A DNA stretch of 64,000 nucleotides from IMG/VR virus record IMGVR_UViG_3300027985_000918, positions 310,001 through 374,000 of that record; one strand, given 5' to 3'. Under the pieces are notes generated by a model. The model saw only the letters and a list, made by a program, of their open reading frames with translations. It ran no database searches and was not told where the DNA came from. The position numbers were made by a program, and so were the translations under genes. Shown here one piece after another: positions 2,692-26,552 of this stretch. Position 1 is the stretch's first letter. Each line of letters begins with the position of its first letter.

Positions 2692-2717
2692 GGTAACCGA
2701 CCCTCTTCGGCAAGTAG
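2692..2717 (+). promoter_or_regulatory. Putative class-II (ECF-like) promoter
   Basis: GGTAAC-N16-GTAG, upstream of the radical SAM gene. Confidence 0.6.
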
Positions 2718-2741
2718 TGCTCCAGCAACATGGAGGAACAT

Positions 2742-3698
2742 ATGCGCCTGGAGAAGATTGGTTTCTACACACTAAGCGACAGCCGAGCCCACTCGGCCTC
2801 GGAAACCTCCCCCTTGATGCGCTGTGAGCTACTGCTCACGGATGCCTGCAATTTCCGATGCCCCTATTGCCGGGGCCTTAAGCCGGACCAGAAGGGCACC
2901 CTCCCTCTGAATCAGGCGATGTACACGGTGCAACTCTGGTGTGACCAGGGGCTCCAGAACGTCCGCTTCTCGGGAGGAGAGCCAACCCTGTACAAGGGTC
3001 TCCCGGAATTGGTCTCCTACTGCAAGACCCGAGGGGTCAATCGAATCGCCGTCTCCACGAACGGCTCCATGCCCCTCCAGCTCTACAAGGGGCTGATCCG
3101 GGCTGGAGTCAACGACTTCTCCATCTCCCTGGATGGGGGCTGCTGCGCTGTGGGCGACGAGATGTCCGGTGGTGTCACCGGCTCCTGGAGCCGAGTGGTT
3201 GAGAACATCCGGCAGATCTCCAAGCTCACCTATGTGACGGTAGGCATGGTCTTCACCGAGGCCAACGTAGAGCAGTGCGTCGAAGCGGTCATGTTCGCAC
3301 GCAGTCTAGGGGTGTCCGATGTGCGAGTCATCCCCTCAGCCCAGTTCAACCAGGCCCTGACGAAACTGGCAGATCTGCCGTCCGAAACCCTGGACACCTT
3401 GCCCATTCTAAAGTACCGCATCCAAAACCTACGGGAGGGACGCCACGTCCGGGGGTTTGACGACCACCCGAAGTGCTGGCTGGCCCTCGACGACATGGCG
3501 GTAGTCCAGGACAAGCACTACCCCTGCATCATTCACCTTCGTGAGGGCGGAGCCCCCATCGGGACAGTCGGCCCTAACATGAGGACGGAGAGAGCCCTCT
3601 GGGTCAGGAACCACGATCCCCACTCCGACCCTATCTGCCGGGCGAACTGCTTGGACGTGTGCCTCGACTACAACCGCAAAGCGGGGGAGGGGCGATGA
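2742..3698 (+). CDS. Radical SAM enzyme
   Basis: CNFRCPYC (CxxxCxxC), FSGGEPTL, STNG, ISLDG; Cys-rich C-terminus. GGAGG RBS before the ATG at 2742. Confidence 0.93.
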   Translation: MRLEKIGFYTLSDSRAHSASETSPLMRCELLLTDACNFRCPYCRGLKPDQKGTLPLNQAMYTVQLWCDQGLQNVRFSGGEPTLYKGLPELVSYCKTRGVNRIAVSTNGSMPLQLYKGLIRAGVNDFSISLDGGCCAVGDEMSGGVTGSWSRVVENIRQISKLTYVTVGMVFTEANVEQCVEAVMFARSLGVSDVRVIPSAQFNQALTKLADLPSETLDTLPILKYRIQNLREGRHVRGFDDHPKCWLALDDMAVVQDKHYPCIIHLREGGAPIGTVGPNMRTERALWVRNHDPHSDPICRANCLDVCLDYNRKAGEGR

Positions 3699-3787
3699 TC
3701 TCGGCAGAAAAACTAGGCTGGTCTCCCTTTGCTCGAAAAGGCGGGGAGCAGCAAAACCCATTGGAGAATGGCTGAGCCGGAGACGAC

Positions 3788-4147
3788 ATGAAAAGTGCTG
3801 ATTCGGACATCCTCTACTACGGAAACGGAAGAGGCGGGGCTGCGGTTTCCCTTGATGATGGGATCACCGTCATCGTGGCTACCGGAAGAACCCTCGACCG
3901 GACTGGGGTCCCCATGTGGGAGGAGACCGACTTGGAGGACATCGAGGCCCTTCTCACCGAGCCTCAGAAGAAGGCCATCCAGGACTATCGGAATCGTCCC
4001 CCGCTGACCCCTCTTCAGGAAATGGCTGAGCGCCTGCGAAGGAAAACGGCTCTCCGACTGCGGAGAGAGAATGCTCAGCCCAACTCGCACACCTACCTGG
4101 GGCAGCTCGGGGAGGAAGCCTTGGTAGTGATGTCCGAGGAAGACTGA
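3788..4147 (+). CDS. Hypothetical protein
   Basis: GGAG RBS and plausible composition; follows the radical SAM gene. Confidence 0.6.
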   Translation: MKSADSDILYYGNGRGGAAVSLDDGITVIVATGRTLDRTGVPMWEETDLEDIEALLTEPQKKAIQDYRNRPPLTPLQEMAERLRRKTALRLRRENAQPNSHTYLGQLGEEALVVMSEED

Positions 4148-4506
4148 GTCCACTTCGGGTCCCGCACCCACGGGTGAGAGGGACCTTCTCCCCTACACCA
4201 CTTCGAGTCGTCTGTGGACCACCTTGTCCTGGCTGTACCCCTTTTCCCCCTCTTCAGAGCCATCTCCGCCTTGAGCGCCTCCGAGCGGTTGGCATAGGGG
4301 CCGTACAGCGCCCTAGGCTCCCAGGGCCTGTGCTTGGACGTATACTTCCCGCCCCCCTGGATTTCTCCGTTGTGCTGACGAATTCTCCGAGAGGGATCCG
4401 TTGTGGACCCCACGTAATGGAACCCTGGGAGAGGCTTACCCCTCCGATCCACACGGAGTTCCTGACTTTGAATCACGTAAACCCACCAGTTTTTTTCGCT
4501 ATCCAT
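4093..4506 (-). CDS. SLX1-like GIY-YIG structure-specific endonuclease
   Basis: VYVIQS...YVGSTTDPSRRIRQHNGEIQGGGKYT...RPW...ALKAE. Confidence 0.88.
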   Translation of the reverse strand: MDSEKNWWVYVIQSQELRVDRRGKPLPGFHYVGSTTDPSRRIRQHNGEIQGGGKYTSKHRPWEPRALYGPYANRSEALKAEMALKRGKRGTARTRWSTDDSKWCRGEGPSHPWVRDPKWTQSSSDITTKASSPSCPR

Positions 4507-4508
4507 GT

Positions 4509-4534
4509 GGTAACTCGGAGATGTCTGCCAGTAG
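4509..4534 (+). promoter_or_regulatory. Putative class-II promoter
   Basis: GGTAAC-N16-GTAG, upstream of 4574. Confidence 0.6.
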
Positions 4535-4573
4535 GTAGGGTGAACTAGAGGACCCTATCACAGGAGAAGTCCC

Positions 4574-5989
4574 ATGAGAAGCATGAACCTGATCACCATC
4601 ACCATCTCCCTCATCCTGGCCTCTTTCCTCGGGGGCTGCCTCGAACCGGAACTGTCCCCCGAGTCCTACAGAACCTTCTCGGAAGGTCCTGCAGACACTA
4701 CCCCCCCGACCCCTGAGGAGGAGGATCTCGACAACCCAGTGGATGAGCCGGACAGCACGGTTCCCGAAGATCCCTTCAAGTACCCCGACCTTGGGGTATG
4801 GCAGCGCCAGCGAGTGCTGTCCTGGGAACCGGGAACCATGGAAGGTTGGAGCCCCGACCTGACAATCCCGGACTGGGCACTCCCGGACCCTGAGGACCCT
4901 GAGGACCCTGAGGACCCCGTTCCCAACCCGGTCCTTCCCCCAGCAGTGGATAGCGGGGACAACAACCCCTGCACCTGGGACTCCGGTGACGAACCCCCCG
5001 TCCCCCGCAGCGGGTTCGTGAGCGACCAGCCGGGCTCCCTGAGAGACCTGGTGGAGATGGCCGATGGATCCTTCATGTTCACGGGATCGAGTGGATTCGC
5101 CGCTGCTACCTACGGGTTCGGCTACCTGAGGGAGTGGGTCTCCGAGTACGAAGGCGACTACGGCGGGGCTATCCTGTCGGAGGGCACAAACCTCGTCAGT
5201 CTCGGACGGACCGATGGCGGAGATCTCCAAATCGTCCGGCAGGGTGGATCCGGGGAACTGCTCTCCTCCACAGTGGTGAATGGAGAGAACCTGCACGTCT
5301 ATGACTCGGTTCCCCACCCCAACGGTTACGTGGTGCTCTACTACCAGGCGGGGACCCAGATGCACTCGGTATCCCTCCTGACCCCGGAGGGAGAGACCAT
5401 GTGGGAACTTCCCCTGCGGAACGCCCACCAGCTCGTCCAGACAGAGAGGGGGTTCGCCGTGGTAGGGGCCTCCGAGGACTGGCTGTCCACATGGGTTCGG
5501 GAATACGACCTCGACGGAACTCTCGTATGGGAAGCCAGCATCGAGATGGGTGGGGTACGCCACCGCCGACTGGCCGTGACAGAGGGTGGGGAGTTCGTGG
5601 TGACGACGGCTTCCTACGAAGAAGCCTACGTATCTTTGCTGAGCCATGAGGGCGGTGTCCTCTGGACCTCGGTCCTCCAGTCCCCGTCGGACCAGTCCTA
5701 CGAGTTCAACGCAGTGGCCGTGGCAGTAGAAGGCATTTACGTGGGGGGACGTCGCTACAACGGGGACAACACCCAGACGGGGGTCCTGTTCCTTCTGGAT
5801 GCCGAGGGATCCCCCTTGGGTTCCTGGGATCTGGCTTCCCCCAACCCCTACAACGACACATCGGTGCTCGGGATTCACCCTCTCCCGGAAGGTGGGGCAG
5901 TAGCCCACGGGGTGTTCGACCACAAGGGGTTCTGGCAAATCGTCAGCCCCCTCGGGTTCTGCACTGAACCCGAGGGTGCCTCCGAATAG
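4574..5989 (+). CDS. Lipoprotein with Pro/Asp/Glu-rich linker and predicted beta-propeller
   Basis: Signal peptide with lipobox FLGGC, (DPE)x3 repeat, DNNPCTWD, repeated xGxxxW blade motifs (PEGETMW, LDGTLVW, HEGGVLW). Confidence 0.8.
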   Translation: MRSMNLITITISLILASFLGGCLEPELSPESYRTFSEGPADTTPPTPEEEDLDNPVDEPDSTVPEDPFKYPDLGVWQRQRVLSWEPGTMEGWSPDLTIPDWALPDPEDPEDPEDPVPNPVLPPAVDSGDNNPCTWDSGDEPPVPRSGFVSDQPGSLRDLVEMADGSFMFTGSSGFAAATYGFGYLREWVSEYEGDYGGAILSEGTNLVSLGRTDGGDLQIVRQGGSGELLSSTVVNGENLHVYDSVPHPNGYVVLYYQAGTQMHSVSLLTPEGETMWELPLRNAHQLVQTERGFAVVGASEDWLSTWVREYDLDGTLVWEASIEMGGVRHRRLAVTEGGEFVVTTASYEEAYVSLLSHEGGVLWTSVLQSPSDQSYEFNAVAVAVEGIYVGGRRYNGDNTQTGVLFLLDAEGSPLGSWDLASPNPYNDTSVLGIHPLPEGGAVAHGVFDHKGFWQIVSPLGFCTEPEGASE

Positions 5990-6946
5990 CTACCGGGGAA
6001 TCGAGACAACCCTGCCTGAAGTCTTCCTGGCCTGATACTCTTCGATGGCCTCCACGATGGCTGCTACCAGAGGATGCCGAACCACGTCCCGGGTTCCAAA
6101 CTCATGCACCCCGATTCCGGGGATATGGGACAGAACGCTCACCATCTCGGACAGCCCCGAAGACTTCCTTTCCAAATCGACCTGGGTCACATCCCCCGTC
6201 ACGATGCACCGGCTATCCTCCCCCAGGCGGGTCAGAAGCATAGTGAGCTGCTGCCAGGTGCAGTTCTGAGCCTCATCTAGCAGAACGAACGCATTGGAGA
6301 GGGTGCGTCCCCGCATGTAAGCCAGAGGAGCGATCTCGATTTTGCCTTCCTTCTTCAGGCGATCTACCCGGGCTTTGCCCATGAGGGTGTTGAGAGCATC
6401 GAACAGCGGCTGAAGGTACGGGTTCACCTTCTCATCAAATGTCCCCGGCAGGAAGCCCAGACTCTCGCCGGCCTCAACTGCCGGGCGGGTAAGGATGATC
6501 CTCTCCACCTCACCAGTGAGGAACGCATGAATGGCGGCGGCCACCGCCAAGTACGTCTTTCCGGTACCCGCAGGACCGATGCCGAAAACGATGTCATGGT
6601 CCCCGATCTTCTCCAGATACTCGGACTGTCCCTCCGTCTTCGGTTCGACGTTGCTGTAGGTGATGGGCTTCCGGCTGCTACGCTTCTTCATGTAGGCATC
6701 CATCATTGCGGAGCTAGTCGAGTGGCCCTGGTGTGCCTTCAGACTAATGAAGTTCACCAGATCCGTGACGTACTCCAGGTCATGCTCGGAGCGAGCGTTC
6801 AGCACGAGCTTCTTGGACTGAACCCGTATGCGGGTGCCAAGCCGCTGGAGAAAACGAATCGTGGCCCAGTCTGTCCCACAGAACAGGGCCAGTACGGACT
6901 CGTCCTGGAATTTGAATACACGCTTGAAGGGGAAAGGTTCGTTCAT
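5990..6946 (-). CDS. phoH: PhoH family ATPase
   Basis: [55 protein letters not shown]. Confidence 0.97.
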
Positions 6947-6970
6947 GGACAGGCCCCCACTCTAGTTCAC

Positions 6971-7001
6971 CCACCTTAGAGTGGATGATAGCGGCCCTAC
7001 C
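6971..7001 (-). promoter_or_regulatory. Putative class-I (late) promoter
   Basis: GGT-AGGGCCGC-TAT-N13-GTGG, upstream of phoH. Confidence 0.55.
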
Positions 7002-7062
7002 GAACAGAGAGAAGCCCCGAGAGGACGGAGGGAGTTGCAGGTGGGCGGGAGGTGTCAGCCTG

Positions 7063-9552
7063 TCATGCCGCTTTGCGATCCACCGTGAAGTGTTCCCCCG
7101 TGACGTACACGGTCAGCAGCAGCCCGTTGCCCAGGGGGAAGAAGGTACCCTCCTCCTTCTCCGCCTTGGCGAGCTTGATGTCCGGGAAATCCTGGGAGAT
7201 CTGCTCCGCCGTCCGGGCCGATGTGGTGAAGCTCTCCGGGAGGAGGCCGGTGGCCCCAACGTAGAACACCAAGGGGCAAACCTTCTGCTGGTAGATGTCC
7301 GAGATCGCCCGGTCCACCCTCTTCAGCGTCTCCGCCAGCACCTCAACCTGCTGATCCCGATCGGCCACCGGCTCCCGGATGGCGAACATGAACGCCTTCC
7401 GGTCGTCGTAGTCGAGCCCAGCCTCCTGGAGCACGTCGAGGATGTGGCCGTTGTCCTCCAGGCCGAGGAAATCGGCGTAGATGGGGTAAGCCAGGGCGTC
7501 CACGGCATCGAGCTTCGTGCGAGACGAGAGCTGCTTGATTCCCCAGATGTTGTTCTTCCCCAGCCACATGTCGAGAGTGGGCTTTTCCACCTTCTCCCGC
7601 TTGTCATCCTGGAGGCTCCCGTCTCCGCCTCGAACCAGAGTGAATCTCCTCTGGAGGTAGGCGTTGCCAGAGGCGAGCTTACCGAGGTTCGTGATCTCGG
7701 CCGTACCCACCTCGACCCTGTAGGACAGGCGAGTGTCCACCTCTCCCTTGGCGATGGCCTCTTGGAGGTCAGTGTAGGGCACCGTCGAGGGCGGGGAGAA
7801 GTACAGGGAAGGGGTCAGATGGTACTGCCCCAGCTCTGCGATCTGGTCCCCCGTCAAGCTGGTGGAGCTGGACTTGAGGACCCCCGACAGGATCTTGCTC
7901 AGGACCGTGAACTTCGCCAGCTTGTCGAAGGTGCTGGGCTGGATGTCGAACTCCTGGCTGAAGTCCACCAGCGGCAGGTTCGCCATGTCAATCACCAGCA
8001 TGGCCGCCGGGTCGAACTCCCCGTCCACCACCCCCAAGGCCTTCAGTGCCCGGAAGGCCCTCTTGTCGGAGGTCTGGATCGGGAGCTTGGTCGTAGTGAC
8101 CTCCCCGTCCCCGATGAGGGTGTAGTTGCGGAAGTCTTTGAGATCTAGAGGGATGCCGGCCACCTTCTCGATGATGGTGCCGGTCTTCTTCTCCACCAGG
8201 TTCACATCCCGGACGAGGCGGATGTTGGCCGTGGCCGTGTTCCGGTTGATCTCCACCGCCGACACCTGGACGAACCCGTCCTTGCCGTTCTTCGGGTGAA
8301 CATCGTACTTCGGCTCCGTGACCGTACCATCCTCGTTGCGGACCCCGGCGACACGCTTGATGCCCCGGCGCTTGTAGTTCTCCATCATCGTCGGGACGTG
8401 AACCCGGATATGGCTGCGGTACTCGTCAATGGTCTGGAGGACCGACAGTGCTGTCGGTCCTTCGAGAGAGAGGCCGTAATTGCCATCCCATCTCCGGGAC
8501 GTGCCCGGGAGACGATTGAAGAGGGACTGCTCCACCCCCTCGGCCATGGAAGCCACTGCGGTGGCCGTGAGAGCCCTGTAGTGAGCCTTCAGGAGGTCGT
8601 CGTCCCTGGCGGAGACCAGGGCGTACTTGGCGACGTTGAAGTTGCCCTCGGAGATGGCAGCACGGGCGTAGGCCAAAGCCAGATCTTCTGGGGCATCCTT
8701 CTCGATGGCCTCGTACTGTTCCTGGGTGATCCCGAACAGCCGGTAGACGGTGGCGTCATCGCTCGCCGAAAGCCCACAGACGTTGATGGTTTCGGTCGTC
8801 CCGAGGACCTTCCTGCCGCTCTTGCTGACGAAGATGCCGTAGTCTGCGTCCCCCAAGTCCAGCTCAATCGTCGGGCTCATGCTGCCCGTCAGAAGCTGCT
8901 GAGTGTCGTAGAACGCCTGGTAGACCTGCTTGATGCTCTTGGCCTGGATGCAGGTACCCGAGAGCTGGTTGGCGATGCCTGCCAGGAGGTTGAAGTCGGA
9001 CCAGTCTCGGTAGGCGACCGTGTTGACGAACACGTTGGGGTGAGCCTTGAGCTGGCCCACGGCCTCCTGAATGGCCTTGTTCTCTCGGCTGGGAGAGCGG
9101 TCGTTGGCGTACCCGTCCGAGTGCAGGGAGATACATGTGATCTCCCCATCGCTGATCAGCTTCTCCGCCGCCGAGAGTCCCTGGCTGATACAGGTGAGCC
9201 CACGGACCTGAAGGTTGCGGATCTCTCGGATCTGGGGAGAGTCCACGCCCATCACATCCTCGATGGGGGTCCGCTCGAAGTGAACCCGCACGTCCCCCAT
9301 CGAACTGTACGTGATGAGGCTAACCTTCAACCCTGGGTTGTTGAACTCGTCGAGAGTCAGCACCTTCTCTACGGTAGCCTTGAGATCCCTGAGATCATGG
9401 TACATGGATCCGGACACATCGAAGACGAAAATGTGGTGGCTGGGGGATGATGCCGGAGCCGACTTCGACGTGTCTTTGACCTCGGTCTCGACACGGTAGA
9501 ATTCGACAGGCTCTCCCTTGAAGTTCCGAAGGGCGAATCGGGTCTGACTCAT
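7063..9552 (-). CDS. Large vWA (MIDAS) domain protein
   Basis: HIFVFDVSGSM (DxSxS), GLTCIS, LHSDGY; 829 aa; GGAG RBS. Confidence 0.88.
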   Translation of the reverse strand: MSQTRFALRNFKGEPVEFYRVETEVKDTSKSAPASSPSHHIFVFDVSGSMYHDLRDLKATVEKVLTLDEFNNPGLKVSLITYSSMGDVRVHFERTPIEDVMGVDSPQIREIRNLQVRGLTCISQGLSAAEKLISDGEITCISLHSDGYANDRSPSRENKAIQEAVGQLKAHPNVFVNTVAYRDWSDFNLLAGIANQLSGTCIQAKSIKQVYQAFYDTQQLLTGSMSPTIELDLGDADYGIFVSKSGRKVLGTTETINVCGLSASDDATVYRLFGITQEQYEAIEKDAPEDLALAYARAAISEGNFNVAKYALVSARDDDLLKAHYRALTATAVASMAEGVEQSLFNRLPGTSRRWDGNYGLSLEGPTALSVLQTIDEYRSHIRVHVPTMMENYKRRGIKRVAGVRNEDGTVTEPKYDVHPKNGKDGFVQVSAVEINRNTATANIRLVRDVNLVEKKTGTIIEKVAGIPLDLKDFRNYTLIGDGEVTTTKLPIQTSDKRAFRALKALGVVDGEFDPAAMLVIDMANLPLVDFSQEFDIQPSTFDKLAKFTVLSKILSGVLKSSSTSLTGDQIAELGQYHLTPSLYFSPPSTVPYTDLQEAIAKGEVDTRLSYRVEVGTAEITNLGKLASGNAYLQRRFTLVRGGDGSLQDDKREKVEKPTLDMWLGKNNIWGIKQLSSRTKLDAVDALAYPIYADFLGLEDNGHILDVLQEAGLDYDDRKAFMFAIREPVADRDQQVEVLAETLKRVDRAISDIYQQKVCPLVFYVGATGLLPESFTTSARTAEQISQDFPDIKLAKAEKEEGTFFPLGNGLLLTVYVTGEHFTVDRKAA

Positions 9553-9586
9553 GGGTACTTCTCCGTTGGGTGTGGTTCCTGGGAGC

Positions 9587-9612
9587 TTACCCTTTTTTCA
9601 AATTTGGTTACC
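9587..9612 (-). promoter_or_regulatory. Putative class-II promoter (divergent pair, leftward)
   Basis: Minus strand GGTAAC-N16-GTAA, upstream of the vWA gene. Confidence 0.6.
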
Positions 9613-9617
9613 CCCTA

Positions 9618-9644
9618 GGTAACAACTCTCACATTGAGGGGTAG
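9618..9644 (+). promoter_or_regulatory. Putative class-II promoter (divergent pair, rightward)
   Basis: GGTAAC-N17-GTAG, upstream of 9674. Confidence 0.6.
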
Positions 9645-9673
9645 GGGAACCGCACCCCTAAGGAGGAAAAGAG

Positions 9674-10033
9674 ATGATCAACTTGACTATGCACAAGGCC
9701 ACCCCAGATCAGAGTGAAGCAGGAGTGACCGACCTTCCAGCCGAAAAGGTCGAGAAGGTCAAGTGCCTCCTCAACTTCCAGAATCTCCCCACATCGGAAG
9801 ATGTGGAAGAGAGAGCCGCTCGGCTGGCGGAGCTGGCAGCAGAAGAAGGGGCAACCTCTGCCATGATCGGGGGGGCTCCCTTCCTCATGGCACCCCTCGC
9901 ACAGCATCTGAAGCAGAGCCACATCACGCCCTTCTTCGCCTTCTCCCGACGGGAGGTCGTCGAAGGTGAGGGGGTGAACGGTGAGGTCGTGAAAACCAGC
10001 GTGTTCCGGCACGCCGGTTTTGTGGCAGCCTAG
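9674..10033 (+). CDS. Small Rossmann-like protein resembling Csx20/Csx15 (candidate ring nuclease)
   Basis: NLTMHKATPDQ, AMIGGAP, FAFSRRE...GEVVKTSVFRHAGF resemble Csx20-type motifs; strong AGGAGG RBS. Confidence 0.55.
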   Translation: MINLTMHKATPDQSEAGVTDLPAEKVEKVKCLLNFQNLPTSEDVEERAARLAELAAEEGATSAMIGGAPFLMAPLAQHLKQSHITPFFAFSRREVVEGEGVNGEVVKTSVFRHAGFVAA

Positions 10034-10066
10034 TCCCCCCTGTCCCCCCGCCTGAGGAAACTCACC

Positions 10067-11203
10067 TTGGACAAAAACACCACCCTAATGCGCCTGCTCT
10101 CCCGTTTCTGTGTGGATCACGAGGTTGGAGATCACACCTACGTTGTCGGCGGAGCCGTCCGGGACTTCTTGCTGGGGCGCCCTATCAAAGACGTGGACGT
10201 GGTCACGGACACCGTCAACGGAGGGCTGACCAGCGAGCTGCTGGCCCAGAGTCTGGCCCAGCAGTTCCAGGGATCTACCATCGTGACCAACAACTACGGG
10301 GTCGCCATCCTCACCCTGAGAGGCTGCGTCTACGAGGGGGTATGCCTAGACGGGATGGTCGTCGAAATTGCCAACGCCCGGAAAGAGTCCTATGGGGGGA
10401 AGACCGGAAAAGGCTACAAGCCTCACATGGTCGAACCGGCCTCCATTCAGGAGGATGTGGTCCGACGGGAGTTCCGGTTCAACACCCTCCTATGGAGGAT
10501 GGCCGACATCCAAGAAGGGCCGGTGGCGGCAAGAGTTCTTGACCTGACCGGCATGGGCCTGACGGACATCCGAGAGGGACAGATGGTGTGCCCGACGGAC
10601 CCCAACAAGGTGTTCACCGACGACCCCACTCGGATGCTCAGGGCGGTCAAGTTCGGCCTACGGCTCGGGTTCAACCTGGGGAGCCTGGAACTGGCCTGCA
10701 TCCAAACCCACGCCAGGGCGCTGCTGAACGTCCCCCCGAATGCGGTGGCAGTCATCCTGCTGAACGACATCTTCGGGGTGGACGTCCGGGAAGGTCTGAG
10801 GATGCTGGAACACATGGAGCTGCTTCCCGTGGTGAGAGAGATGGCGGATACCAACCCAGCCTTTCGCACCACCCTGACCCACTGGGCACGGCCCCGGGTC
10901 CATGCCATGCTGGATCTGGTCGAGGTGGGCCGCCTCCCCGTATCCGGGGGTCTGGAGATCATGCTGGGGGAGGAAGGAATGGGGAAGCTACGGCTCGCCG
11001 TTCATGAAATGGACGACCCGATGGCTCTGAGATTCGTCGAGGCGCTTCGCCAGCCGGGAAAGGTGATGGACACCCAAAAGGTGGCCATGCAGAGAGGCCT
11101 CACGGGGGCTCGGATGGGGGAGATCACGGTGGAAGCCCGGAACCTCCTACTGGAATCACCCAGCCTGTTCCGAGAGGGTCTCACGCAGGCGATGCTCCGG
11201 TGA
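10067..11203 (+). CDS. Class II tRNA nucleotidyltransferase (CCA-adding / poly(A) polymerase family)
   Basis: YVVGGAVRDFLLGRPIKDVDV, ARKESY, DVVRREFRFN, DDPTRMLRAVKF. Confidence 0.9.
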   Translation: MDKNTTLMRLLSRFCVDHEVGDHTYVVGGAVRDFLLGRPIKDVDVVTDTVNGGLTSELLAQSLAQQFQGSTIVTNNYGVAILTLRGCVYEGVCLDGMVVEIANARKESYGGKTGKGYKPHMVEPASIQEDVVRREFRFNTLLWRMADIQEGPVAARVLDLTGMGLTDIREGQMVCPTDPNKVFTDDPTRMLRAVKFGLRLGFNLGSLELACIQTHARALLNVPPNAVAVILLNDIFGVDVREGLRMLEHMELLPVVREMADTNPAFRTTLTHWARPRVHAMLDLVEVGRLPVSGGLEIMLGEEGMGKLRLAVHEMDDPMALRFVEALRQPGKVMDTQKVAMQRGLTGARMGEITVEARNLLLESPSLFREGLTQAMLR

Positions 11204-15901: not shown

Positions 15902-15913
15902 CGGACTCTCCTA

Positions 15914-16828: not shown

Positions 16829-18802
16829 TCAGGCCAGGGTGCCGTCGTTGTTGTAGACGGTTACGATTCGAGTGGGGGTGACTTCCGCTGTGACCGGACC
16901 CGGCTGATACCAGGTAGCCTGGAACGGCAAGAGGTCGGAATCCGGGAACAGGGTGACCGAGCCATCCTGAAGAGCAGACAGGTGTCCGTCCAGAAGGCTC
17001 TGCTGGAAACTGGAGCCGTCTACGGTGGCCCGGATGGGCTTGTTCTCCACGTTCTCAGTGTCACCCCCACGGGTGATACCCAGACCGGGATGTCGCTTCC
17101 AGGGGATGCTTGCCGTGATGACTCCACCGATCATCACGGAGTCGAACACCGTGTTGGCAGAAGTGAAAGCTCCCGCAGCCGTGGTATCCCAATCGAACCC
17201 GGACGGGTTCTTGGACGTGCCGGCTGGCACCACGTACCCACGCCCCGCCAGGATCTCCAGAATGTCCAGGACACTGGACGTGCCTGCTCCGGCGACCGAG
17301 ATACCAGACACACCGACAATGGCATTCATTGCGGCATTCATGTTGGCTGCCGCCAAAGCAGCACCAGCATCCACACGAGCGATGAGGGCTGCCGCCGCTG
17401 CGGACAGAAGAGCCGTCGTCCAAGTCTCCATCGTCCGAGCCAGGTGGTCATCGGACAGAATCTCCCGGGCAGCGTCCGTAGAGGTCAGCGTCATGGAACC
17501 CGGGGATCCCGTGGTGTCCGCAGTGATGGTAACAGTGTCCGTACCACCATTGGCTGCAGTCACCGTCGAGCCAACCGCTGCCAACAGAACATCCGAGGCG
17601 GCATTGTTCAGCGTGGTCGCCAGAGAGCCGGCAGCCAGGACATTGGTCCCCATCTGGATCAGGGATCCCCACTCCTGAGAGGCAGCAACCGGAGCGGCCA
17701 ACGTCAAAGTGGCGGCGCTCAGGACCAGCTCGGCAGCTTCCGTAGTGGCCATATCGAGCTGGCCCGAGAACCCCGGCAATGTCGCCGTCAGAGTCACCGT
17801 GTCCGTGGCAGCCACAGCAGTCATGCTGCCATCCAAGGCACCCGGGGCAGGGCCGGCATAGGCAGCACCGATCAGAGCCTGAGTGGCAACATCGTTCACC
17901 GTAGCGGCGATGGACGCAGCAACCTGAACCGAGGGATCCGTCTGGCCCTCGTAATGAGCAGCCGAACCGAACTCCTGAGCGGCAGGGTTCGGATCGGTGT
18001 GGGTCATTGCTGCGCCGGAAAGAACAACACGGAGGCCGCCGGTGCTCTCTGCCAAGGTGGCGTCGCCCCAAGCACCCAACACACTGGGGGTCAGGGTGAC
18101 AGTATCCGTACCACCGCTTGCCCCAGTCAGGGTACCACCAGTGGCGGCGGGGACCAGTGCGTCCAGGGCTGCCGTCAACAGAGCCTGCGTGGCGGCGTCG
18201 TTGATGGCCTGCGCCAAGAAACCGGCAGATGCAATGTCACTACCCGCTGTAGCCGAATCCTGGAACACCTGGTTGGGGAAATCGTTTGCGCCGTTGGTCG
18301 CCGTGAACAACACCCCAGCGATAGTGATGGTATCTCCGTTCTGGATACCAGCAACCTGGATGGTCCCTGTGGCCGCACCCTCGACGCAGTCAAAAGCGAC
18401 GAGACCCAGGGTGAGCCGGCCCACCGCAGCAGTCGGATCATTGACGGTGACCGTGCCCTCTGCCGTGTTCTCCACAGCAGTGAAAGCCACCCCCCCAAGA
18501 GTGACCAGGTCACCAACAAGAGGTCCGACCATCTGGACGGTCCCCACGGCGGCTTCCGAACCCCCTGGGTCCACCCGATCCGCCAGGTAAGCCGACAGGC
18601 CTCGCAGGGAAGCATTCGGGTCGTTCTGGCGCAGAAGGGCTCCGCTGGCGGTCACGATCACAGGATCGTTTTGCACCCGGTTGACGTAGCGGGTCTGTCC
18701 CGGCGGGTCCAGGTTGCTGCGTAGACTGGTGTTGGGCACCAGATCTAGAACCTGAAGGGTGCCGTCGGGGATGTCTGTCCTTGCAAGGCAAATGTACGGC
18801 AT
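16829..18802 (-). CDS. Virion structural protein (paralog 1) with internal repeated modules
   Basis: YICLARTD...LQVLDLVPNTS...LSAYLADRV...ILAGR...VTVYNNDG; about three AIND.A.QALL...TDTVTLT modules. Confidence 0.75.
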   Translation of the reverse strand: MPYICLARTDIPDGTLQVLDLVPNTSLRSNLDPPGQTRYVNRVQNDPVIVTASGALLRQNDPNASLRGLSAYLADRVDPGGSEAAVGTVQMVGPLVGDLVTLGGVAFTAVENTAEGTVTVNDPTAAVGRLTLGLVAFDCVEGAATGTIQVAGIQNGDTITIAGVLFTATNGANDFPNQVFQDSATAGSDIASAGFLAQAINDAATQALLTAALDALVPAATGGTLTGASGGTDTVTLTPSVLGAWGDATLAESTGGLRVVLSGAAMTHTDPNPAAQEFGSAAHYEGQTDPSVQVAASIAATVNDVATQALIGAAYAGPAPGALDGSMTAVAATDTVTLTATLPGFSGQLDMATTEAAELVLSAATLTLAAPVAASQEWGSLIQMGTNVLAAGSLATTLNNAASDVLLAAVGSTVTAANGGTDTVTITADTTGSPGSMTLTSTDAAREILSDDHLARTMETWTTALLSAAAAALIARVDAGAALAAANMNAAMNAIVGVSGISVAGAGTSSVLDILEILAGRGYVVPAGTSKNPSGFDWDTTAAGAFTSANTVFDSVMIGGVITASIPWKRHPGLGITRGGDTENVENKPIRATVDGSSFQQSLLDGHLSALQDGSVTLFPDSDLLPFQATWYQPGPVTAEVTPTRIVTVYNNDGTLA

Positions 18803-18827: not shown

Positions 18828-18890
18828 CGGGCGAGCCTCTACTCGCCTATCAGGTCCGGGCGAGCCTCTACTCGCCTATCAGGTCCGGGC
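18828..18890. repeat. Perfect 29-bp tandem repeat (2.2 copies), each unit containing a hairpin
   Basis: CGGGCGAGCCTCTACTCGCCTATCAGGTC twice plus CGGGC; GGCGAG/CTCGCC stem in each unit. Confidence 0.95.
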
Positions 18891-18905
18891 TATAGGCTCT
18901 CTATC
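18876..18905 (-). promoter_or_regulatory. Putative class-I (late) promoter
   Basis: GAT-AGAGAGCC-TAT-N12-ATAG. Confidence 0.6.
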
Positions 18906-22923: not shown

Positions 22924-22947
22924 GTTGCAGCCCTCCAGTGGCAGACT

Positions 22948-22978
22948 TCACTCAGGGGCCGCCGATAGGCGAGCAACC
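22948..22978 (-). promoter_or_regulatory. Putative class-I (late) promoter
   Basis: GGT-TGCTCGCC-TAT-N13-GTGA. Confidence 0.6.
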
Positions 22979-22981
22979 GAA

Positions 22982-24301
22982 TTAGCCCTGGAGCTTGGAG
23001 ACCTCGGAGCGAATACGCTTGACGATACCCGGGGACTCGATAGCGTAGATAGCCTCAAGAATATCCGGAGAGTCGGCGTAGAAATCCACCGCTTCGGACA
23101 CCCGATTCCGCCAATGCTGCGACTTGTCCCAGGTGCTCACGATCTCCTGGATCGCTGCCTGACGGTCCAGCCTCTGGGGGGCGTTGCCAATCACGACTCC
23201 CGGGATGAGAGCCGGAGTAGACACCGCTTGGCTCCCCATCGCCTCACCGATGGAAGTGTCGATGGTGACCTCCAGGTCATCCCCACTCTGGACCGGGAAC
23301 CGCCTCGCCTGGTTCATGTGGGAAGGGTTCACCCCGTCGTCGATGACCGGAGCCTGAGGAGCCGACCCGACGATAACCTGGGGGGTCTCCCACTGCGGCG
23401 TAGCCCCAACCTCCGCCTGAAGGTTGCGGATAGCCCCATCATCCCGGATGAGAGTTCCGGCGGGCTCCCCGTGCATGGGATCGATGCTGATCGGACGATC
23501 CGTTCGGCCCGTCCACTCCCGGAGCTGAGGGTCCCCCTCGGCACCGACGGCCGCTGCCTTGCTGCTGGTCCGCACATGACCGATAACGTCACCCTGCTGT
23601 CCATCCATCATATGAACGGCGTACTTGCCCCCCCCGACCTTCCGAACCCCCCCCTCATCATCCGCCGAATTGTGCCGCTGCCCACCGAAGCTGTCCGGCT
23701 TCACGAGCTGCTGGTTGTAAGCGATCTGCTGGATGACGGCATTGTTGTATTCGTCCGTGGCGAAACTGAACTCCTTTTCGCTCGGGTAGTCCCTACGATT
23801 CGGCCAGGGCGGAAGGGCGCTCTCGTCCACCCAGGCCGGGACGATCTGCCCGCTGGGTAGCTGCTTCCGTCCCCGGACCACCTGAGCAGACGCCTGGTGC
23901 TGAGCGGCAGCCTGGGTCTGCGGACTGCGGGTCGGAGTCGGCTGCGGAGCCTGGGGTTGGCGACGAACACCCACCTGGCCTACCACCTGCTCTTCATGGG
24001 ACACCACCGCAGTGTGTACGGCCTGACGATCCCGGTTACCAGAGTCGGCTGCATGAACCTGCACCCCGGCGGGCTGAGGCCGGTAGATGGACTGGGTGTC
24101 GGCCACGGGAACAAGCCACCCGCCGAGGATGCCGCCTTTGAGGGTGGGCATCGAGAACGTCTCCCCGCCCATTTTGAGGGTGACACCATCAAACTCGACC
24201 TCCACGTCCTTGACGAGGTCTCGTTCGATGGGACCAAGGTGGACGGTGGTGGTTGCACGGAACTTGAGAAATGTGCCGGGTTTGAACTGGATCTGGCTCA
24301 T
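22982..24301 (-). CDS. Hypothetical protein
   Basis: Start MSQIQF with GGAGG RBS; long Pro/Gln-rich linker; C-terminal WDKSQHWRNRV domain. Confidence 0.7.
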   Translation of the reverse strand: MSQIQFKPGTFLKFRATTTVHLGPIERDLVKDVEVEFDGVTLKMGGETFSMPTLKGGILGGWLVPVADTQSIYRPQPAGVQVHAADSGNRDRQAVHTAVVSHEEQVVGQVGVRRQPQAPQPTPTRSPQTQAAAQHQASAQVVRGRKQLPSGQIVPAWVDESALPPWPNRRDYPSEKEFSFATDEYNNAVIQQIAYNQQLVKPDSFGGQRHNSADDEGGVRKVGGGKYAVHMMDGQQGDVIGHVRTSSKAAAVGAEGDPQLREWTGRTDRPISIDPMHGEPAGTLIRDDGAIRNLQAEVGATPQWETPQVIVGSAPQAPVIDDGVNPSHMNQARRFPVQSGDDLEVTIDTSIGEAMGSQAVSTPALIPGVVIGNAPQRLDRQAAIQEIVSTWDKSQHWRNRVSEAVDFYADSPDILEAIYAIESPGIVKRIRSEVSKLQG

Positions 24302-24368
24302 CGTATGTATCCTCCATGAGATGTGGGCCCACAGCCCATACCGCCACAATACCCTTCGGTTCTCGGGA

Positions 24369-24632
24369 TCAGTTCAAAGGGAGAGAACCGGGAGGCATAT
24401 TGAGCAAAGACAGGGTCGCCTGAAGGTGGGTGACCATAATGGGGAGAAGTTTCCGGGGAGCCCGCACTCTCGATACCACCGTTGCTCGGTTGACAGTTGG
24501 GCTGTACAGCAGAAACTCCAGGAACACCTTTGCGGGGATATCACTGTCCAGGACTCGGAAAGCATTAGCATACATTCCGAGTTCCAAACGGGGGTCGATA
24601 CTCACCTGGGCCATATTCCGGCTGCCGGTCAT
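24369..24632 (-). CDS. Small hypothetical protein (DUF3467-like)
   Basis: YANAFRV...VFLEF...VVSRVR. Confidence 0.6.
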   Translation of the reverse strand: MTGSRNMAQVSIDPRLELGMYANAFRVLDSDIPAKVFLEFLLYSPTVNRATVVSRVRAPRKLLPIMVTHLQATLSLLNMPPGSLPLN

Positions 24633-24699
24633 TCAGGACGCCTCCTGGAGTCACACCTTGACAGTACCAGGGTACTCTTGTCAGATGCTGGAGGTTCTA

Positions 24700-25122
24700 A
24701 TGCAGAGATACGTGGCCGGCTTCATGTTCAACCCTTCGATGGACCATCTCGCCCTGGTGCGGAAGAAGCGCCCCCCGTGGCAAGAAGGACGCCTGAACGC
24801 CATTGGGGGGGAAATCGCTGAGGGAGAGGAGCCTCTGGAAGCAATGGTAAGAGAGTTCCAGGAAGAGACGGGGGTCTTCCATACGGAGTGGGAACCCACG
24901 GTCATCCTACACAAGGAAAATGTGTTCGAGGTCCACTTCTTCCGAGCGTTCTCCAAAAGAGTCTACGAAGTTAGGACGATTGAAGATGAGGCCATCGAAC
25001 TGCACCCTCTGACCCACCTGAATGCGGGACCCTCCTTCAGGACCATCCCGAATCTAAGCTGGCTCGTACCTATGCAGCTCGACCTCCACTTGGACTTCCC
25101 AGTCACCCTCTCCGAGAGATAA
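24700..25122 (+). CDS. Nudix hydrolase
   Basis: Nudix box GGEIAEGEEPLEAMVREFQEETG; GGAGG RBS before the ATG at 24700. Confidence 0.92.
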   Translation: MQRYVAGFMFNPSMDHLALVRKKRPPWQEGRLNAIGGEIAEGEEPLEAMVREFQEETGVFHTEWEPTVILHKENVFEVHFFRAFSKRVYEVRTIEDEAIELHPLTHLNAGPSFRTIPNLSWLVPMQLDLHLDFPVTLSER

Positions 25123-25203
25123 ACCGAAACTACCCAAGAAGAGAGCCCCCCCCACAGCAGTGTGGAAGGGGCTCACGAAAGTAGCGGAGCCCTTCTGTCG
25201 GGT

Positions 25204-26469
25204 CTACTCCGGAATCACGTTCTCCCGGCGCATTTCCTGCCTGGCCTTGACGAGAGGAGGGACATCCCCCGAAACGAGAGGAGGGAGGTTGTCGATGGAG
25301 GCCCTCAACTCGGCCTCCAGTGCCACCAGTCGGGCCTTGGCTTCCCTCTCCTGGGCTTCATGGAGGCTGCGGGCGGTCTCCAGCTCCGCCTGGGCCTTTT
25401 GAATTCTCTCCCCGGTCTCATCGAGATCAGAAAGGGCGGCCTCCAGCTCTTCCCTACGACGGGCGAACTTATGACGGATCATCGCCTGTCGCTGCTCTTC
25501 CCGTCTGTTCTGGGTAGCCTCCAGACCTGGCCCCCACTCCTTGTTCAGGTAGTAGGACAGAACCTCGCCCTGGCCTCGAAGTCCCAGGTACTGAGCCTCC
25601 TTATCCAGGATGGGGAGGAACTTCTCATCAAGGAAGAACAGCCGGGCCGAGCCGGAGGGCATCACTTCATCGGGGACTGTTTCCGAGTCGAGCGCATGCC
25701 GGGGAGGCTTCCGAACCGGACGTCTGTCATCGAGCAGGGTGTCCAGATCCAGCTCTGTGACATCATCGTGACGTCCGATCCCCAAAGAATCCAGGGGTAC
25801 CCCGTCCACCACCACCACAGGAGGACTAGGGTCGGCTGTCGCCACGAGGGGCTTCTCCGTAGTGACCCCACTCCTTTCTTGGAGGGGAAGGGAGAGCTGA
25901 CGGTTCCGCACCCAAGACCTGCCGAAGCGCCTAACGGTGTTGGTTGCCACCACAAGCTGGGCCCCCGTCTTCGGGCAGCGGACCGAAAAACCATTGCGGA
26001 GATCCCGCAAAACATACTGAGCCTGGCTCTCACTGAAAGGCAGGGTGTACAGTTTGATAGGCTCCAACTCCCCGTAGTCCTCCACGTTGATGGCCGCCAG
26101 AGTGATCAGGGCATACCCCCTCCTCTTGGACTCCGGAGACATGAGGTACGGGAGCCAGCCATTCTCCCGGAGCCACCGGCCGAGCTTGAACGCTCTGTCC
26201 CCCAAAGAAAACAGGGGCTCCGCCCCGGAAGCGTCCACCCGCACCAAGCCGAACTCAACCAGACGCATGAGGTGCGCAAACACCCGGTTGTAATTTCCCG
26301 ACGCCCGGAACGACTTGCCCGTGACCTCCGAAACCCGCTGGCCTACCTTCGGCATGTCGATGACGTCGTCGGGGCCGTACTCGAAGCAGGCCCCCAAGGT
26401 CAGAATGGTGCTCCATGTTGTACTCTCGACATTTTTCTCAATCCCAAATTTTCTGAAGATGTCCACCAT
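25204..26469 (-). CDS. Hypothetical protein (wHTH-like N-terminus, coiled-coil C-terminus)
   Basis: 421-aa ORF with GGGAG RBS and a class-II promoter upstream. Confidence 0.65.
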   Translation of the reverse strand: MVDIFRKFGIEKNVESTTWSTILTLGACFEYGPDDVIDMPKVGQRVSEVTGKSFRASGNYNRVFAHLMRLVEFGLVRVDASGAEPLFSLGDRAFKLGRWLRENGWLPYLMSPESKRRGYALITLAAINVEDYGELEPIKLYTLPFSESQAQYVLRDLRNGFSVRCPKTGAQLVVATNTVRRFGRSWVRNRQLSLPLQERSGVTTEKPLVATADPSPPVVVVDGVPLDSLGIGRHDDVTELDLDTLLDDRRPVRKPPRHALDSETVPDEVMPSGSARLFFLDEKFLPILDKEAQYLGLRGQGEVLSYYLNKEWGPGLEATQNRREEQRQAMIRHKFARRREELEAALSDLDETGERIQKAQAELETARSLHEAQEREAKARLVALEAELRASIDNLPPLVSGDVPPLVKARQEMRRENVIPE

Positions 26470-26526
26470 GTTGCTCCCCCTGCTGGTATTCCTGGAGGGT
26501 CTACCCTTTCAGCTCTCCTACGGGGG

Positions 26527-26552
26527 CTACCGGAAGCCGAAAGTTCGTTACC
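26527..26552 (-). promoter_or_regulatory. Putative class-II promoter
   Basis: Minus strand GGTAAC-N16-GTAG. Confidence 0.6.

What the first reader, a model, noticed from the sequence alone, without database searches (positions are those of the whole stretch)
2692..26552. Second promoter class GGTAAC-N16/17-GTAR (ECF-sigma-like) in front of non-structural genes
Seen: five intergenic matches (2692+, 4509+, 9587-, 9618+, 26527-) upstream of the radical SAM, lipoprotein, vWA, Csx20-like/CCA and 421-aa genes. I saw none before structural genes. Two sites share GTTACCCCCTAGG. Known: ECF sigma promoters usually have AAC at -35 and GT-containing -10 elements with about 16-bp spacing. Inference: an early or middle regulon, giving at least a two-tier transcription program.
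Basis: partly seen in the sequence, partly recalled or inferred. Interest (0 to 1): 0.65.

Follow-up and report, generated by a model that had tools for sequence, protein, structure and literature searches.

The report
Huge-phage promoter class for its own sigma
The five sites belong to about 100 near-identical two-block promoters (GGTAAC, 16-17 bases, GTAG) in a 402-kb uncultivated phage, most likely read by an ECF-like sigma factor that the phage itself encodes to switch on its non-structural genes.

Summary
The window lies in a 402,383-bp IMG/VR phage genome. The pattern occurs 5 times in the window (0.14 expected) and 88 times genome-wide. Of these, 84 lie in the 8.5% of DNA that is intergenic. 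The spacer is only ever 16 or 17 bases, and the median distance to a same-strand start codon is 33 nt. The sites precede RNA/DNA ligases, ADP-ribosyltransferases, vWA proteins, a radical SAM enzyme, a CCA-adding enzyme and tRNAs, never an identified structural gene. No phage RNA polymerase was detected, but there are three sigma-like genes. One of them (sigA, outside the window) has an ECF-like sigma2+sigma4 domain. SigA homologues occur in 19 other, mostly huge, phage records, and none carries this motif. Four of the five relatives examined instead have a private dyad with the same spacing, a GTAG or ATAG -10 and a different -35, in front of orthologues of the same genes. SigA's sigma2 is conserved and its sigma4 is divergent. 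Best reading: a middle (delayed-early) regulon driven by a phage sigma, with a separate CCTATAG-type candidate late class. No RNA data exist, so start sites, timing and the sigma assignment are inferred. This is a new member of a known kind.

The parts
2692..2717 (+). Class A promoter: GGTAAC-N16-GTAG. It lies 24 nt upstream of the start of the radical SAM gene.
   Evidence: Pfam Radical_SAM 2.9e-20 for window 2742-3698
2742..4147 (+). Transcription unit served by the 2692 site: radical SAM protein (2742-3698) and a 119-aa protein (3788-4147).
4509..4534 (+). Class A promoter: GGTAAC-N16-GTAG. It lies 39 nt upstream of the 471-aa gene at 4574-5989, which has a hydrophobic N-terminus and no Pfam family.
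9587..9612 (-). Class A promoter, variant -10 (GGTAAC-N16-GTAA). It lies 34 nt upstream of the 829-aa vWA gene (7063-9552, minus strand), which is followed by PhoH (5990-6946, minus strand). It sits back-to-back with the 9618 site.
   Evidence: VWA 5.7e-8 and PhoH 1.2e-86
9618..9644 (+). Class A promoter: GGTAAC-N17-GTAG. It lies 29 nt upstream of a 119-aa gene (9674-10033), followed by a CCA-adding/poly(A) polymerase-family enzyme (10067-11203).
   Evidence: PolyA_pol head domain 3.7e-16
26527..26552 (-). Class A promoter: GGTAAC-N16-GTAG. It lies 57 nt upstream of the 421-aa gene at 25204-26469 (minus strand), which has no family hit.
26569..26576 (.). Palindromic CCTATAGG, a copy of the second (class B) upstream element. 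It lies in the same divergent intergenic region, 87 nt upstream of the exonuclease gene (26663-28222, plus strand).
   Evidence: phrog_704 DNA repair exonuclease 1e-44
18890..18897 (-). Class B element GCCTATAG, upstream of the 657-aa gene at 16829-18802 (minus strand). Candidate late-type promoter, shown for contrast with class A.
30733..30738 (-). Class B-like CCTATG, 89 nt upstream of gene 29948-30643 (minus strand). That gene heads the unit containing the major head protein gene (29049-29921, minus strand). There is no class A site here.
54554..55180 (-). sigB: a 208-aa protein with two sigma-70 region-4-like helix-turn-helix domains and no sigma2. It is one of the phage's three sigma-like genes and has no class A site in front.

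Best explanation
The five sites are members of a single promoter class (class A, about 100 copies) of a 402-kb phage.

Proposed mechanism:
- The phage has no detectable RNA polymerase of its own, so it uses the host core enzyme.
- An ECF-like, two-domain sigma factor encoded by the phage (sigA, genome 85015-86136, minus strand, outside the window) is made first from a promoter of another type.
- SigA region 4 then binds GGTAAC at -35 and region 2 binds the C-R-R-G-T-A-G block at -10, across a rigid 16-17 nt spacer.
- Transcription starts at a purine about 8-10 nt after GTAG, giving leaders of roughly 15-40 nt.
- This switches on a middle (delayed-early) regulon of host-takeover, RNA-repair, nucleotide and tRNA genes.
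- Large virion genes use a different, single-block CCTATAG-type element.

What is shown: the motif, its strict geometry, its position and direction, the gene sets, the sigma gene and its fold, and the replacement of the motif in relatives in front of orthologous genes.

What is inferred: that sigA rather than another factor reads it, the start sites, and the timing.
For: Promoter nature:
- 84 of 88 sites are intergenic. Sixty-three lie within 150 nt upstream of a same-strand start (median 33 nt), 2 lie in front of tRNA genes, and 12 lie in a repeat array.
- The spacer is only 16 or 17, and one-mismatch -35 variants are almost absent.
- Purines are preferred at +8 and +10 after GTAG.

Dependence on the host core enzyme:
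- Pfam beta, beta-prime and T7-type polymerase profiles find nothing in the genome.

SigA:
- TIGR02937 sigma70-ECF scores E 1.4e-10, 41.0 bits against a 42.9 cut-off (43.5 when read in frame). PF07638 scores 21.0 against 21.1.
- The AlphaFold model of the C-terminal 208 aa has pLDDT 82.
- All structural matches are sigma factors. ECF sigmas H and E head the Foldseek list and sigma L heads the VIA-align list. Sigma2 matches at Z 7.7 (rmsd 2.9) and sigma4 at Z 8.1 (rmsd 2.5).

Comparison with relatives:
- Nineteen other IMG/VR records carry a sigA homologue, and none has the motif enriched.
- Four of the five relatives examined have their own strictly spaced dyad: GTA[AT]AC-N17-GTAG, G[GT]CTTA-N17-GTAG, GACTTA-N17-GTAG (114 sites) and TAAAAA-N17-ATAG.
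- SigA sigma2 is 59-76% identical among these phages, while sigma4 is 25-53% identical. This matches a conserved -10 and a variable -35.
- Orthologues of class A genes sit behind the other phage's own dyad: 28/41 against 4/108, 56/63 against 3/55, 11/26 against 10/80, and 7/22 against 0/86.

Cascade:
- In all five phages the sigA gene lacks its own genome's dyad upstream.
- In LR745208 sigA is preceded by TTGACA-N16-TATATT, and in G005 by TTGACA-N17-TAGGAA.

Gene content:
- RtcB, RNA ligase, NAD-dependent DNA ligase, two PARP-like enzymes, an ADP-ribosylglycohydrolase, CoaE, vWA proteins, a radical SAM enzyme and a CCA-adding enzyme.
- No identified structural gene.
Against: - No transcript data exist. 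Only DNA runs of a hydrothermal-vent metagenome hold the sequence.
- The phage has a second complete sigma-like gene (sigC, genome 394592-396115). It is also conserved in relatives, and its region 4 varies about as much as sigA's, so the sigma assignment is not exclusive.
- Region-4 similarity tracks -35 similarity only partly. G000 and G003 fit; G005 and G006 do not.
- SigA scores just under both curated family cut-offs, and it has a conserved 170-aa N-terminal extension of unknown role.
- The sixth genome, G013, showed no clean GTAG dyad.
- The orthologue test is inflated, because early and late genes are spatially clustered.
- The negative search for a phage polymerase rests on Pfam profiles, which can miss very divergent enzymes.
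Confidence: 0.6

Rival explanations
1. The same sites are promoters, but they are read by the phage's other complete sigma-like protein, sigC (507 aa, genome 394592-396115, plus strand). SigA would then serve another class, for example the CCTATAG elements.
For: - SigC has a weak full-length match to the sigma-70/ECF profile: residues 314-498, E 1.3e-3.
- It is conserved in G005, G006, G013 and LR745208, with moderate divergence in region 4.
- A TTGACT-N16-TATGGT match lies 99 nt upstream, so it could be an early gene.
Against: - Its family match is far weaker than sigA's.
- SigA lies in the densest part of the class A region, next to a 13-site cluster.
- From memory of sigma E and sigma W, the sigA recognition helix (V-S-R-x-L-x-x-L-R) resembles the ECF pattern more closely. 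This was not tested here.
- No sigC orthologue was seen in the fetched part of G003.
Confidence: 0.17
2. The sites are read by a host sigma factor, either an ECF-type or another alternative sigma of an unknown host. They would then be immediate-early promoters, and the phage sigmas would act later.
For: - The architecture is that of cellular ECF promoters (PMC5758882).
- Canonical sigma-70-type promoters are not enriched in the phage's intergenic DNA (3 of 36 matches), so some other class must start the infection.
- Class A is the most numerous class.
- Weak sigA-like genes occur in Planctomycetota MAGs.
Against: - Relatives carry different -35 hexamers in front of orthologous genes while keeping the -10. 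This parallels the conserved sigma2 and divergent sigma4 of a phage-encoded protein.
- Cellular ECF sigmas are normally held inactive and serve small regulons (general knowledge).
- Near-invariance of the ten fixed positions over about 90 sites is typical of phage-specific promoters.
Confidence: 0.1
3. The dyad is recognised by an unrecognised phage-encoded RNA polymerase or a non-sigma DNA-binding regulator, not by a sigma-70-family protein.
For: - Most large proteins of this phage have no family assignment.
- Divergent phage polymerases can escape Pfam profiles.
Against: - Two short blocks separated by a fixed 16-17 nt, ending about 8 nt before a purine and 25-50 nt before start codons, is the geometry of sigma-dependent promoters.
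- Promoters of known single-subunit polymerases are continuous, and those of phiKZ/AR9-type polymerases are single A+T-rich blocks (general knowledge; PMC5449584 is listed).
- No polymerase profile matched.
Confidence: 0.06

Closest known systems
Cellular ECF (group 4) sigma promoters, for example Bacillus subtilis sigma W (TGAAAC-N16-CGTA)
   Same: - The -35 ends in AAC, the spacer is a rigid 16-17 nt, and the -10 is short and contains GTA.
- The cognate candidate is a two-domain sigma2+sigma4 protein (PMC5758882).
   Different: - The -10 is RGTAG rather than CGTx.
- There are about 100 promoters, not a small stress regulon.
- The sigma gene is not autoregulated, and no anti-sigma partner was recognised next to it.
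- The sigma is phage-encoded, has a 170-aa N-terminal extension, and scores just under the curated cut-offs.
phiEco32 gp36 / phage 7-11 sigma and their middle and late promoters (TAATGTATA)
   Same: - A lytic phage encodes a divergent sigma that redirects host core polymerase to phage-specific promoters.
- Those promoters were found as over-represented intergenic motifs, after a host-sigma early phase (PMC4331800).
   Different: - Those promoters are a single 9-bp block. Here there are two blocks with fixed spacing.
- That genome is about 77 kb with a handful of sites. This one is 402 kb with about 100.
- Sequence relatedness of the sigmas was not tested here.
Bacillus phage SPO1 gp28 (middle) and gp33/34 (late) sigma cascade
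   Same: Host sigma for early genes, then phage sigmas reading two-block promoters unlike the host consensus (general knowledge; PMC13401047 abstract).
   Different: - Different promoter sequences.
- SPO1 sigmas are not ECF-like in promoter architecture.
- No experimental timing is available here.
T4 gp55/gp33 late transcription (TATAAATA)
   Same: The second class in this phage (CCTATAG, a single block about 40-60 nt before start codons) resembles the T4 late design. The sigA sigma2 fold also matches gp55 (Z 7.5).
   Different: Class A has a strong -35 block, which T4 late promoters lack. Clamp dependence was not tested.
Sigma factors of 'group 2' jumbo phages (Iyer et al. 2021)
   Same: Jumbo phages without their own polymerase that encode sigma factors to recruit host core enzyme (PMC7824862).
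   Different: That survey describes minimal single-HTH and RpoD-like versions and gives no promoter motifs. This clade has an ECF-like version plus two further sigma-like genes.

Membership tests
ECF-type (group 4 sigma) promoter | -35 element ending in AAC | tested here: met
   GGTAAC is invariant in 88/88 exact sites by definition of the search. One-mismatch -35 variants with a good -10 are nearly absent in intergenic DNA. The criterion comes from PMC5758882.
ECF-type (group 4 sigma) promoter | Short, rigid spacer (14-17 bp) between the -35 and -10 blocks | tested here: met
   Only N16 (52 sites) and N17 (31) occur before GTAG. There are none at N13-15 or N18.
ECF-type (group 4 sigma) promoter | -10 element of the CGT type | tested here: inconclusive
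   The -10 is C-[G/A]-[A/G]-G-T-A-G. It shares GTA with the sigma W CGTA, but the preceding base is a purine, not C.
ECF-type (group 4 sigma) promoter | Transcription start a few nt downstream of the -10 | not testable with these tools
   No RNA run holds the sequence. The only indirect sign is a purine preference at +8 and +10.
ECF sigma factor family (for sigA) | Sigma2 and sigma4 domains only, without regions 1.1 and 3 | tested here: met
   The AlphaFold model (pLDDT 82) shows two helical domains joined by a disordered linker. Sigma2 residues 15-103 match EcfG and SigE. Sigma4 residues 133-208 match CnrH, SigD, SigR and SigW. Full-length matches are to M. tuberculosis sigma H and sigma L. 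An extra conserved N-terminal 170 aa is atypical.
ECF sigma factor family (for sigA) | Score above the curated profile cut-off | tested here: inconclusive
   TIGR02937 scores 41.0 bits against 42.9 (43.5 when read in frame). PF07638 scores 21.0 against 21.1.
ECF sigma factor family (for sigA) | Autoregulation from its own promoter type | tested here: not met
   There is no class A site on the coding strand upstream of sigA in G000, and none of the genome's own dyad upstream of the orthologue in G003, G005, G006 or LR745208.
ECF sigma factor family (for sigA) | Adjacent cognate anti-sigma factor | tested here: inconclusive
   The two neighbouring proteins (290 aa and 91 aa) have no Pfam family. 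Anti-sigmas are often unrecognisable by sequence.
Housekeeping sigma-70 promoter | TTGACA-N16-18-TATAAT-like hexamers | tested here: not met
   Class A has no T at the sixth -10 position and no TTG at -35. Canonical matches are not enriched in intergenic DNA (3 of 36).
T4-type late promoter (gp55) | Single -10-like block with no -35 requirement | tested here: not met
   Class A has an invariant -35 block at fixed spacing. The separate CCTATAG class fits this design better.

The most novel reading that the evidence does not exclude
A clade of huge phages carries an ECF-like sigma whose -35-reading domain and 25-115 cognate promoters per genome have been rewritten together in each lineage, while the GTAG or ATAG -10 and the regulated gene set stay the same. 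Each phage would then own a private, mutually orthogonal transcription channel on the host polymerase.

In this phage the channel may also be self-limited. Two cognate promoters fire antisense inside the sigma gene, and a tandem array of 13 sites lies beside it.
Probability: 0.4. Interest if true: 0.7.

Novelty: new member of a known kind. Interest (0 to 1): 0.5.

Why it matters
- It gives a sequence-level transcription map for an uncultivated 402-kb phage. About 100 promoters mark the non-structural half of the genome, and a second element marks the virion genes.
- It proposes a specific sigma-promoter pair that can be tested in vitro without the unknown host.
- Across relatives the same regulon is served by different -35 hexamers. 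That is a natural series of candidate orthogonal sigma/promoter pairs, and a case for studying how a regulon of about 100 sites changes specificity without collapsing.
- The general principle, a phage sigma redirecting host polymerase, is textbook. The value lies in the detail and the comparative pattern, not in a new mechanism.

Tried and rejected
- **Rfam** on the 13-kb sigA neighbourhood gave nothing meaningful.
- **PDB sequence search** with sigA gave only weak HTH hits. The fold search was needed.
- **Single-protein locus searches** found only the genome itself. An alignment was needed.
- **Motif finding inside the 6.5-kb loci of relatives** was uninformative. Whole-genome stretches were fetched instead.
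- **A home-made Gibbs sampler** for further classes timed out.
- **A possible third class around GGTATGG**, shared by the sigB and sigC upstream regions, did not hold up.
- **Residue-level covariation** of sigma4 with the -35 is inconclusive with five genomes, and it cannot separate sigA from sigC.
- **G013** gave no clean dyad.
- **Literature.** Searches found no description of this motif or clade's promoters.

Full report
**Where the window lies.** The window is bases 310001-374000 of a single 402,383-bp contig with 60% G+C. This is the IMG/VR record IMGVR_UViG_3300028422_000919. Its 'direct terminal repeat' is only 107 bp, so it is probably an assembly overlap of a circular or permuted genome. 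A simple codon-bias gene caller gave 404 genes covering 91.5% of the DNA. The sequence occurs only in DNA runs of a hydrothermal-vent metagenome.

**The observation.** All five sites exist at the stated places (0.14 expected, none of 100 shuffles reached 5). Each is intergenic and points at a same-strand start codon 24-57 nt away. Genome-wide the pattern occurs 88 times, although GGTAAC itself occurs only 200 times on both strands.
- 84 of the 88 sites lie in the 8.55% of the genome that is intergenic (P about 3e-84).
- 63 sit within 150 nt upstream of a same-strand coding start (median 33 nt, interquartile range 26-50).
- 2 sit 33 and 38 nt before tRNA genes, 12 form a repeat array, and 11 are unassigned.
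- The spacer is 16 (52 GTAG sites) or 17 (31) and nothing else. Single changes in the -35 hexamer are almost never seen.
- The -10 block extends to C-[G/A]-[A/G]-G-T-A-G, and purines are preferred 8 and 10 nt after it.
- A further 22 intergenic sites differ at one fixed position, among them the window's 9587 site, which ends in GTAA.

This is the signature of a two-block, sigma-type promoter, not of a palindromic operator or a terminator.

**Distribution and gene content.** Class A sites are dense from 0 to 185 kb and again at 300-337 kb, which includes the first 27 kb of the window. They are essentially absent from 185-300 kb (genes averaging 300-1000 aa) and from 337-402 kb. Genes directly behind them include:
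- RtcB, an Rnl-type RNA ligase and an NAD-dependent DNA ligase;
- two PARP-like ADP-ribosyltransferases and an ADP-ribosylglycohydrolase;
- a CoaE/cytidylyltransferase fusion and an AAA ATPase;
- several vWA proteins and an OmpA-domain protein;
- in the window, a radical SAM enzyme, a vWA protein followed by PhoH, and a CCA-adding-type nucleotidyltransferase.

The major head protein gene (window 29049-29921, minus strand) has no class A site. However, the long minus-strand block of the window also holds a clamp loader, a topoisomerase IB domain protein and a PD-(D/E)XK nuclease. It is therefore not simply 'structural'.

**A second class.** A CCTATAG/CCTATG block lies 37-62 nt before the start codons of many large genes (1969, 1007, 756 and 657 aa, among others). 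It also lies 89 nt before the unit that contains the head gene. Thirteen of 16 CCTATAG copies are intergenic. In the window it occurs at about 12851, 18890, 26569, 30733 and 54528. Its single-block design recalls T4 late promoters. Canonical sigma-70 promoters are not enriched in intergenic DNA (3 of 36 matches).

**What could read class A.** Pfam profiles for the beta and beta-prime subunits and for T7-type polymerases find nothing in the genome, although the beta and beta-prime profiles hit all 14 control genomes. Three sigma-like genes exist.
- **sigA** (genome 85015-86136, minus strand, 373 aa). Its C-terminal 170 aa match the sigma-70/ECF profile (E 1.4e-10; 41.0 bits against a 42.9 cut-off).
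- **sigB** (window 54554-55180, minus strand). It has two region-4-like domains and no region 2.
- **sigC** (genome 394592-396115, plus strand). It has only a weak full-length match.

An AlphaFold model of the sigA C-terminal 208 aa, built on 18 homologues, has pLDDT 82. Every structural neighbour is a sigma factor. ECF sigmas H and E lead the Foldseek list and sigma L leads the VIA-align list. The separate domains match EcfG sigma2 (Z 7.7, rmsd 2.9 over 80 residues) and CnrH sigma4 (Z 8.1, rmsd 2.5 over 65 residues). The language-model atlas places sigA among viral clusters annotated Sigma70_ECF. Among 185,579 species genomes only 11 contigs, all from MAGs, carry a relative. The close ones sit on short contigs that may be mis-binned phage, and the weak ones are mostly in Planctomycetota.

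**Comparative test.** An alignment-based scan of IMG/VR found sigA homologues (32-51% identity, both domains) in 19 other records, many of 200-620 kb. None has GGTAAC-N16/17-GTAG above background, and neither does GenBank LR745208. I fetched most of five of these genomes and repeated the gene calling and k-mer analysis. Four have a dominant upstream dyad with the same geometry and a related -10, but a different -35:

| Genome | Dyad | Sites |
|---|---|---|
| G003 | GTA[AT]AC-N17-GTAG | 26 (25 intergenic) |
| G005 | G[GT]CTTA-N17-GTAG | about 52 |
| G006 | CTTACT-N15-GTAG (equivalently GACTTA-N17-GTAG) | 114 (102 intergenic, one spacing only) |
| LR745208 | TAAAAA-N17-ATAG | about 40 |

G013 gave no clean dyad.

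Among these phages sigA region 2 is 59-76% identical, region 4 is 25-53% and the linker 12-29%. The conserved part of the protein thus parallels the conserved -10, and the divergent part parallels the divergent -35.

Reciprocal-best orthologues of G000 genes in class A units lie in units headed by the other phage's own dyad far more often than orthologues of other genes:

| Genome | Orthologues of class A genes | Orthologues of other genes |
|---|---|---|
| G005 | 28/41 | 4/108 |
| G006 | 56/63 | 3/55 |
| G003 | 11/26 | 10/80 |
| LR745208 | 7/22 | 0/86 |

. Because early and late genes are clustered, the P values are inflated. The qualitative point stands: one regulon, different promoter words.

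**Order of events.** In none of the five phages is sigA preceded by its own genome's dyad. In LR745208 it is preceded by TTGACA-N16-TATATT, in G005 by TTGACA-N17-TAGGAA, and in G000 by the weaker TTGCAC-N17-TAGAAG. This fits expression of sigA by host holoenzyme, followed by class A transcription. I therefore call class A middle or delayed-early rather than immediate-early. This is inference; there are no expression data.

**What remains open.** SigC is also a complete sigma-like protein. It is also conserved and also has a moderately variable region 4. Region-4 similarity tracks -35 similarity for G000/G003 but not for G005/G006. I put sigA at about 0.6, sigC at about 0.17, a host sigma at about 0.1, and other readers at about 0.06.

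Set against the ECF family definition, class A meets the AAC and spacer criteria, and the sigma meets the two-domain criterion. The profile scores are borderline, autoregulation is not met, and no anti-sigma was recognised (criteria from PMC5758882). 'ECF-like' describes how it probably works. Membership of the cellular ECF family is not established.

**Comparison with what is known.** Phage sigma cascades are classical: SPO1, T4 and phiEco32/7-11 (PMC4331800). Jumbo phages without their own polymerase are known to encode sigmas (PMC7824862; PMC7162821). I found no description of this motif or of promoters in this clade. The finding is therefore a new member of a known kind. The clade-wide turnover of the -35 word over a conserved regulon is the more interesting observation.

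**Side observations near sigA (outside the window).**
- A 126-bp tandem repeat (about 5 units, genome 82.19-82.87 kb) consists of back-to-back divergent class A promoters. Neighbouring units converge on a short GC hairpin. It has no Rfam match and no counterpart in the four relatives checked.
- Two class A sites lie antisense inside the sigA linker, in a gene whose full length is conserved.
- Clusters of GAAACTT boxes sit immediately upstream of three class A promoters.

These suggest extra control layers (titration, antisense feedback, an accessory regulator), but none was tested.

Noticed in passing
Outside the window: genome 82,190-82,870 (L010 about 9270-9950): A 126-bp tandem repeat of about 5 units. 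Each unit holds two back-to-back divergent class A promoters, a conserved CGTAAGGA about 10 nt after the plus-strand GTAG, and a short GC hairpin onto which neighbouring units converge. With flanking sites, 13 class A sites lie within 0.9 kb, 2.2 kb from the sigA gene. It has no Rfam match and no counterpart in four relatives. It could be a small-RNA factory or a sink for the sigma.
   Followed up: partly
Outside the window: genome 85,669-85,694 and 85,744-85,769 (plus strand), inside sigA (85,015-86,136, minus strand): Two perfect class A sites point antisense within the low-complexity linker of the sigA gene. These are two of only four 'coding' sites in the genome. The full-length ORF is conserved in relatives, so the sites are truly intragenic. 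This may be negative feedback by antisense transcription.
   Followed up: partly
Outside the window: genome 83,265-83,328, 84,570-84,662 and 183,067-183,169: Clusters of 5, 7 and 4 GAAACTT/AAGTTTC boxes lie immediately upstream of class A promoters 83345+, 84690+ and 183180+. More copies sit around the sigA promoter region. These are probably binding sites for an accessory regulator.
   Followed up: partly
Window about 12851, 18890, 26569, 30733 and 54528; genome-wide list: A CCTATAG/CCTATG single-block element lies 37-62 nt before the start codons of large genes, and 89 nt before the unit that holds the major head protein gene. It is a candidate late promoter class. CCTATAG is also enriched upstream of genes in G003 and CTATAG in G013.
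   Followed up: partly
Window 54554-55180 (minus strand): sigB is a 208-aa protein with two sigma region-4-like HTH domains and no region 2. It is the most conserved of the three sigma-like proteins (47-58% identity in five relatives) and lies next to the clamp-loader gene (55784-57256). It could be a late co-factor or an anti-sigma-like adaptor.
   Followed up: partly
Outside the window: genome 158,402-158,477 (minus strand): One of the 30 tRNA genes has a CUA anticodon (amber suppressor; ARAGORN calls it Pyl). It sits 38 nt behind a class A site. TAG still ends 81 of 404 called genes and coding density is 91.5% under the standard code, so no general recoding is evident.
   Followed up: no
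Window 35363-40483 (minus strand): A 1706-aa protein combines a eukaryotic-type topoisomerase IB catalytic core (E 3e-30) with an N-terminal 2',5' RNA ligase/LigT-like phosphoesterase domain.
   Followed up: no
Outside the window: genome about 87.1-90.8 kb (L010 1380-4983): Long runs of 69-bp (23-aa) tandem repeats lie inside coding sequence just beyond sigA, indicating a large repeat protein.
   Followed up: no
Outside the window: class A genes at genome 118,414-119,334, 149,854-151,683 and 168,722-169,627: Two PARP-like ADP-ribosyltransferases and an ADP-ribosylglycohydrolase are all under class A promoters. This suggests ADP-ribosylation-based host takeover or counter-defence.
   Followed up: no
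Relative LR745208.1, 74.4-75.0 kb (L058 2735-2762): The sigA orthologue of this 485-kb phage is preceded by a near-consensus sigma-70 promoter (TTGACA-N16-TATATT). Its about 40 private promoters are long and almost invariant (CGATTTC-n-CTAAAAA-...-CCGATAGGGT).
   Followed up: partly
Genome ends (1-107 and 402,277-402,383): The 'direct terminal repeat' recorded for the contig is only 107 bp. It is more likely an assembly overlap of a circular or permuted genome than a physical terminal repeat, so coordinates carry no information about injection order.
   Followed up: no
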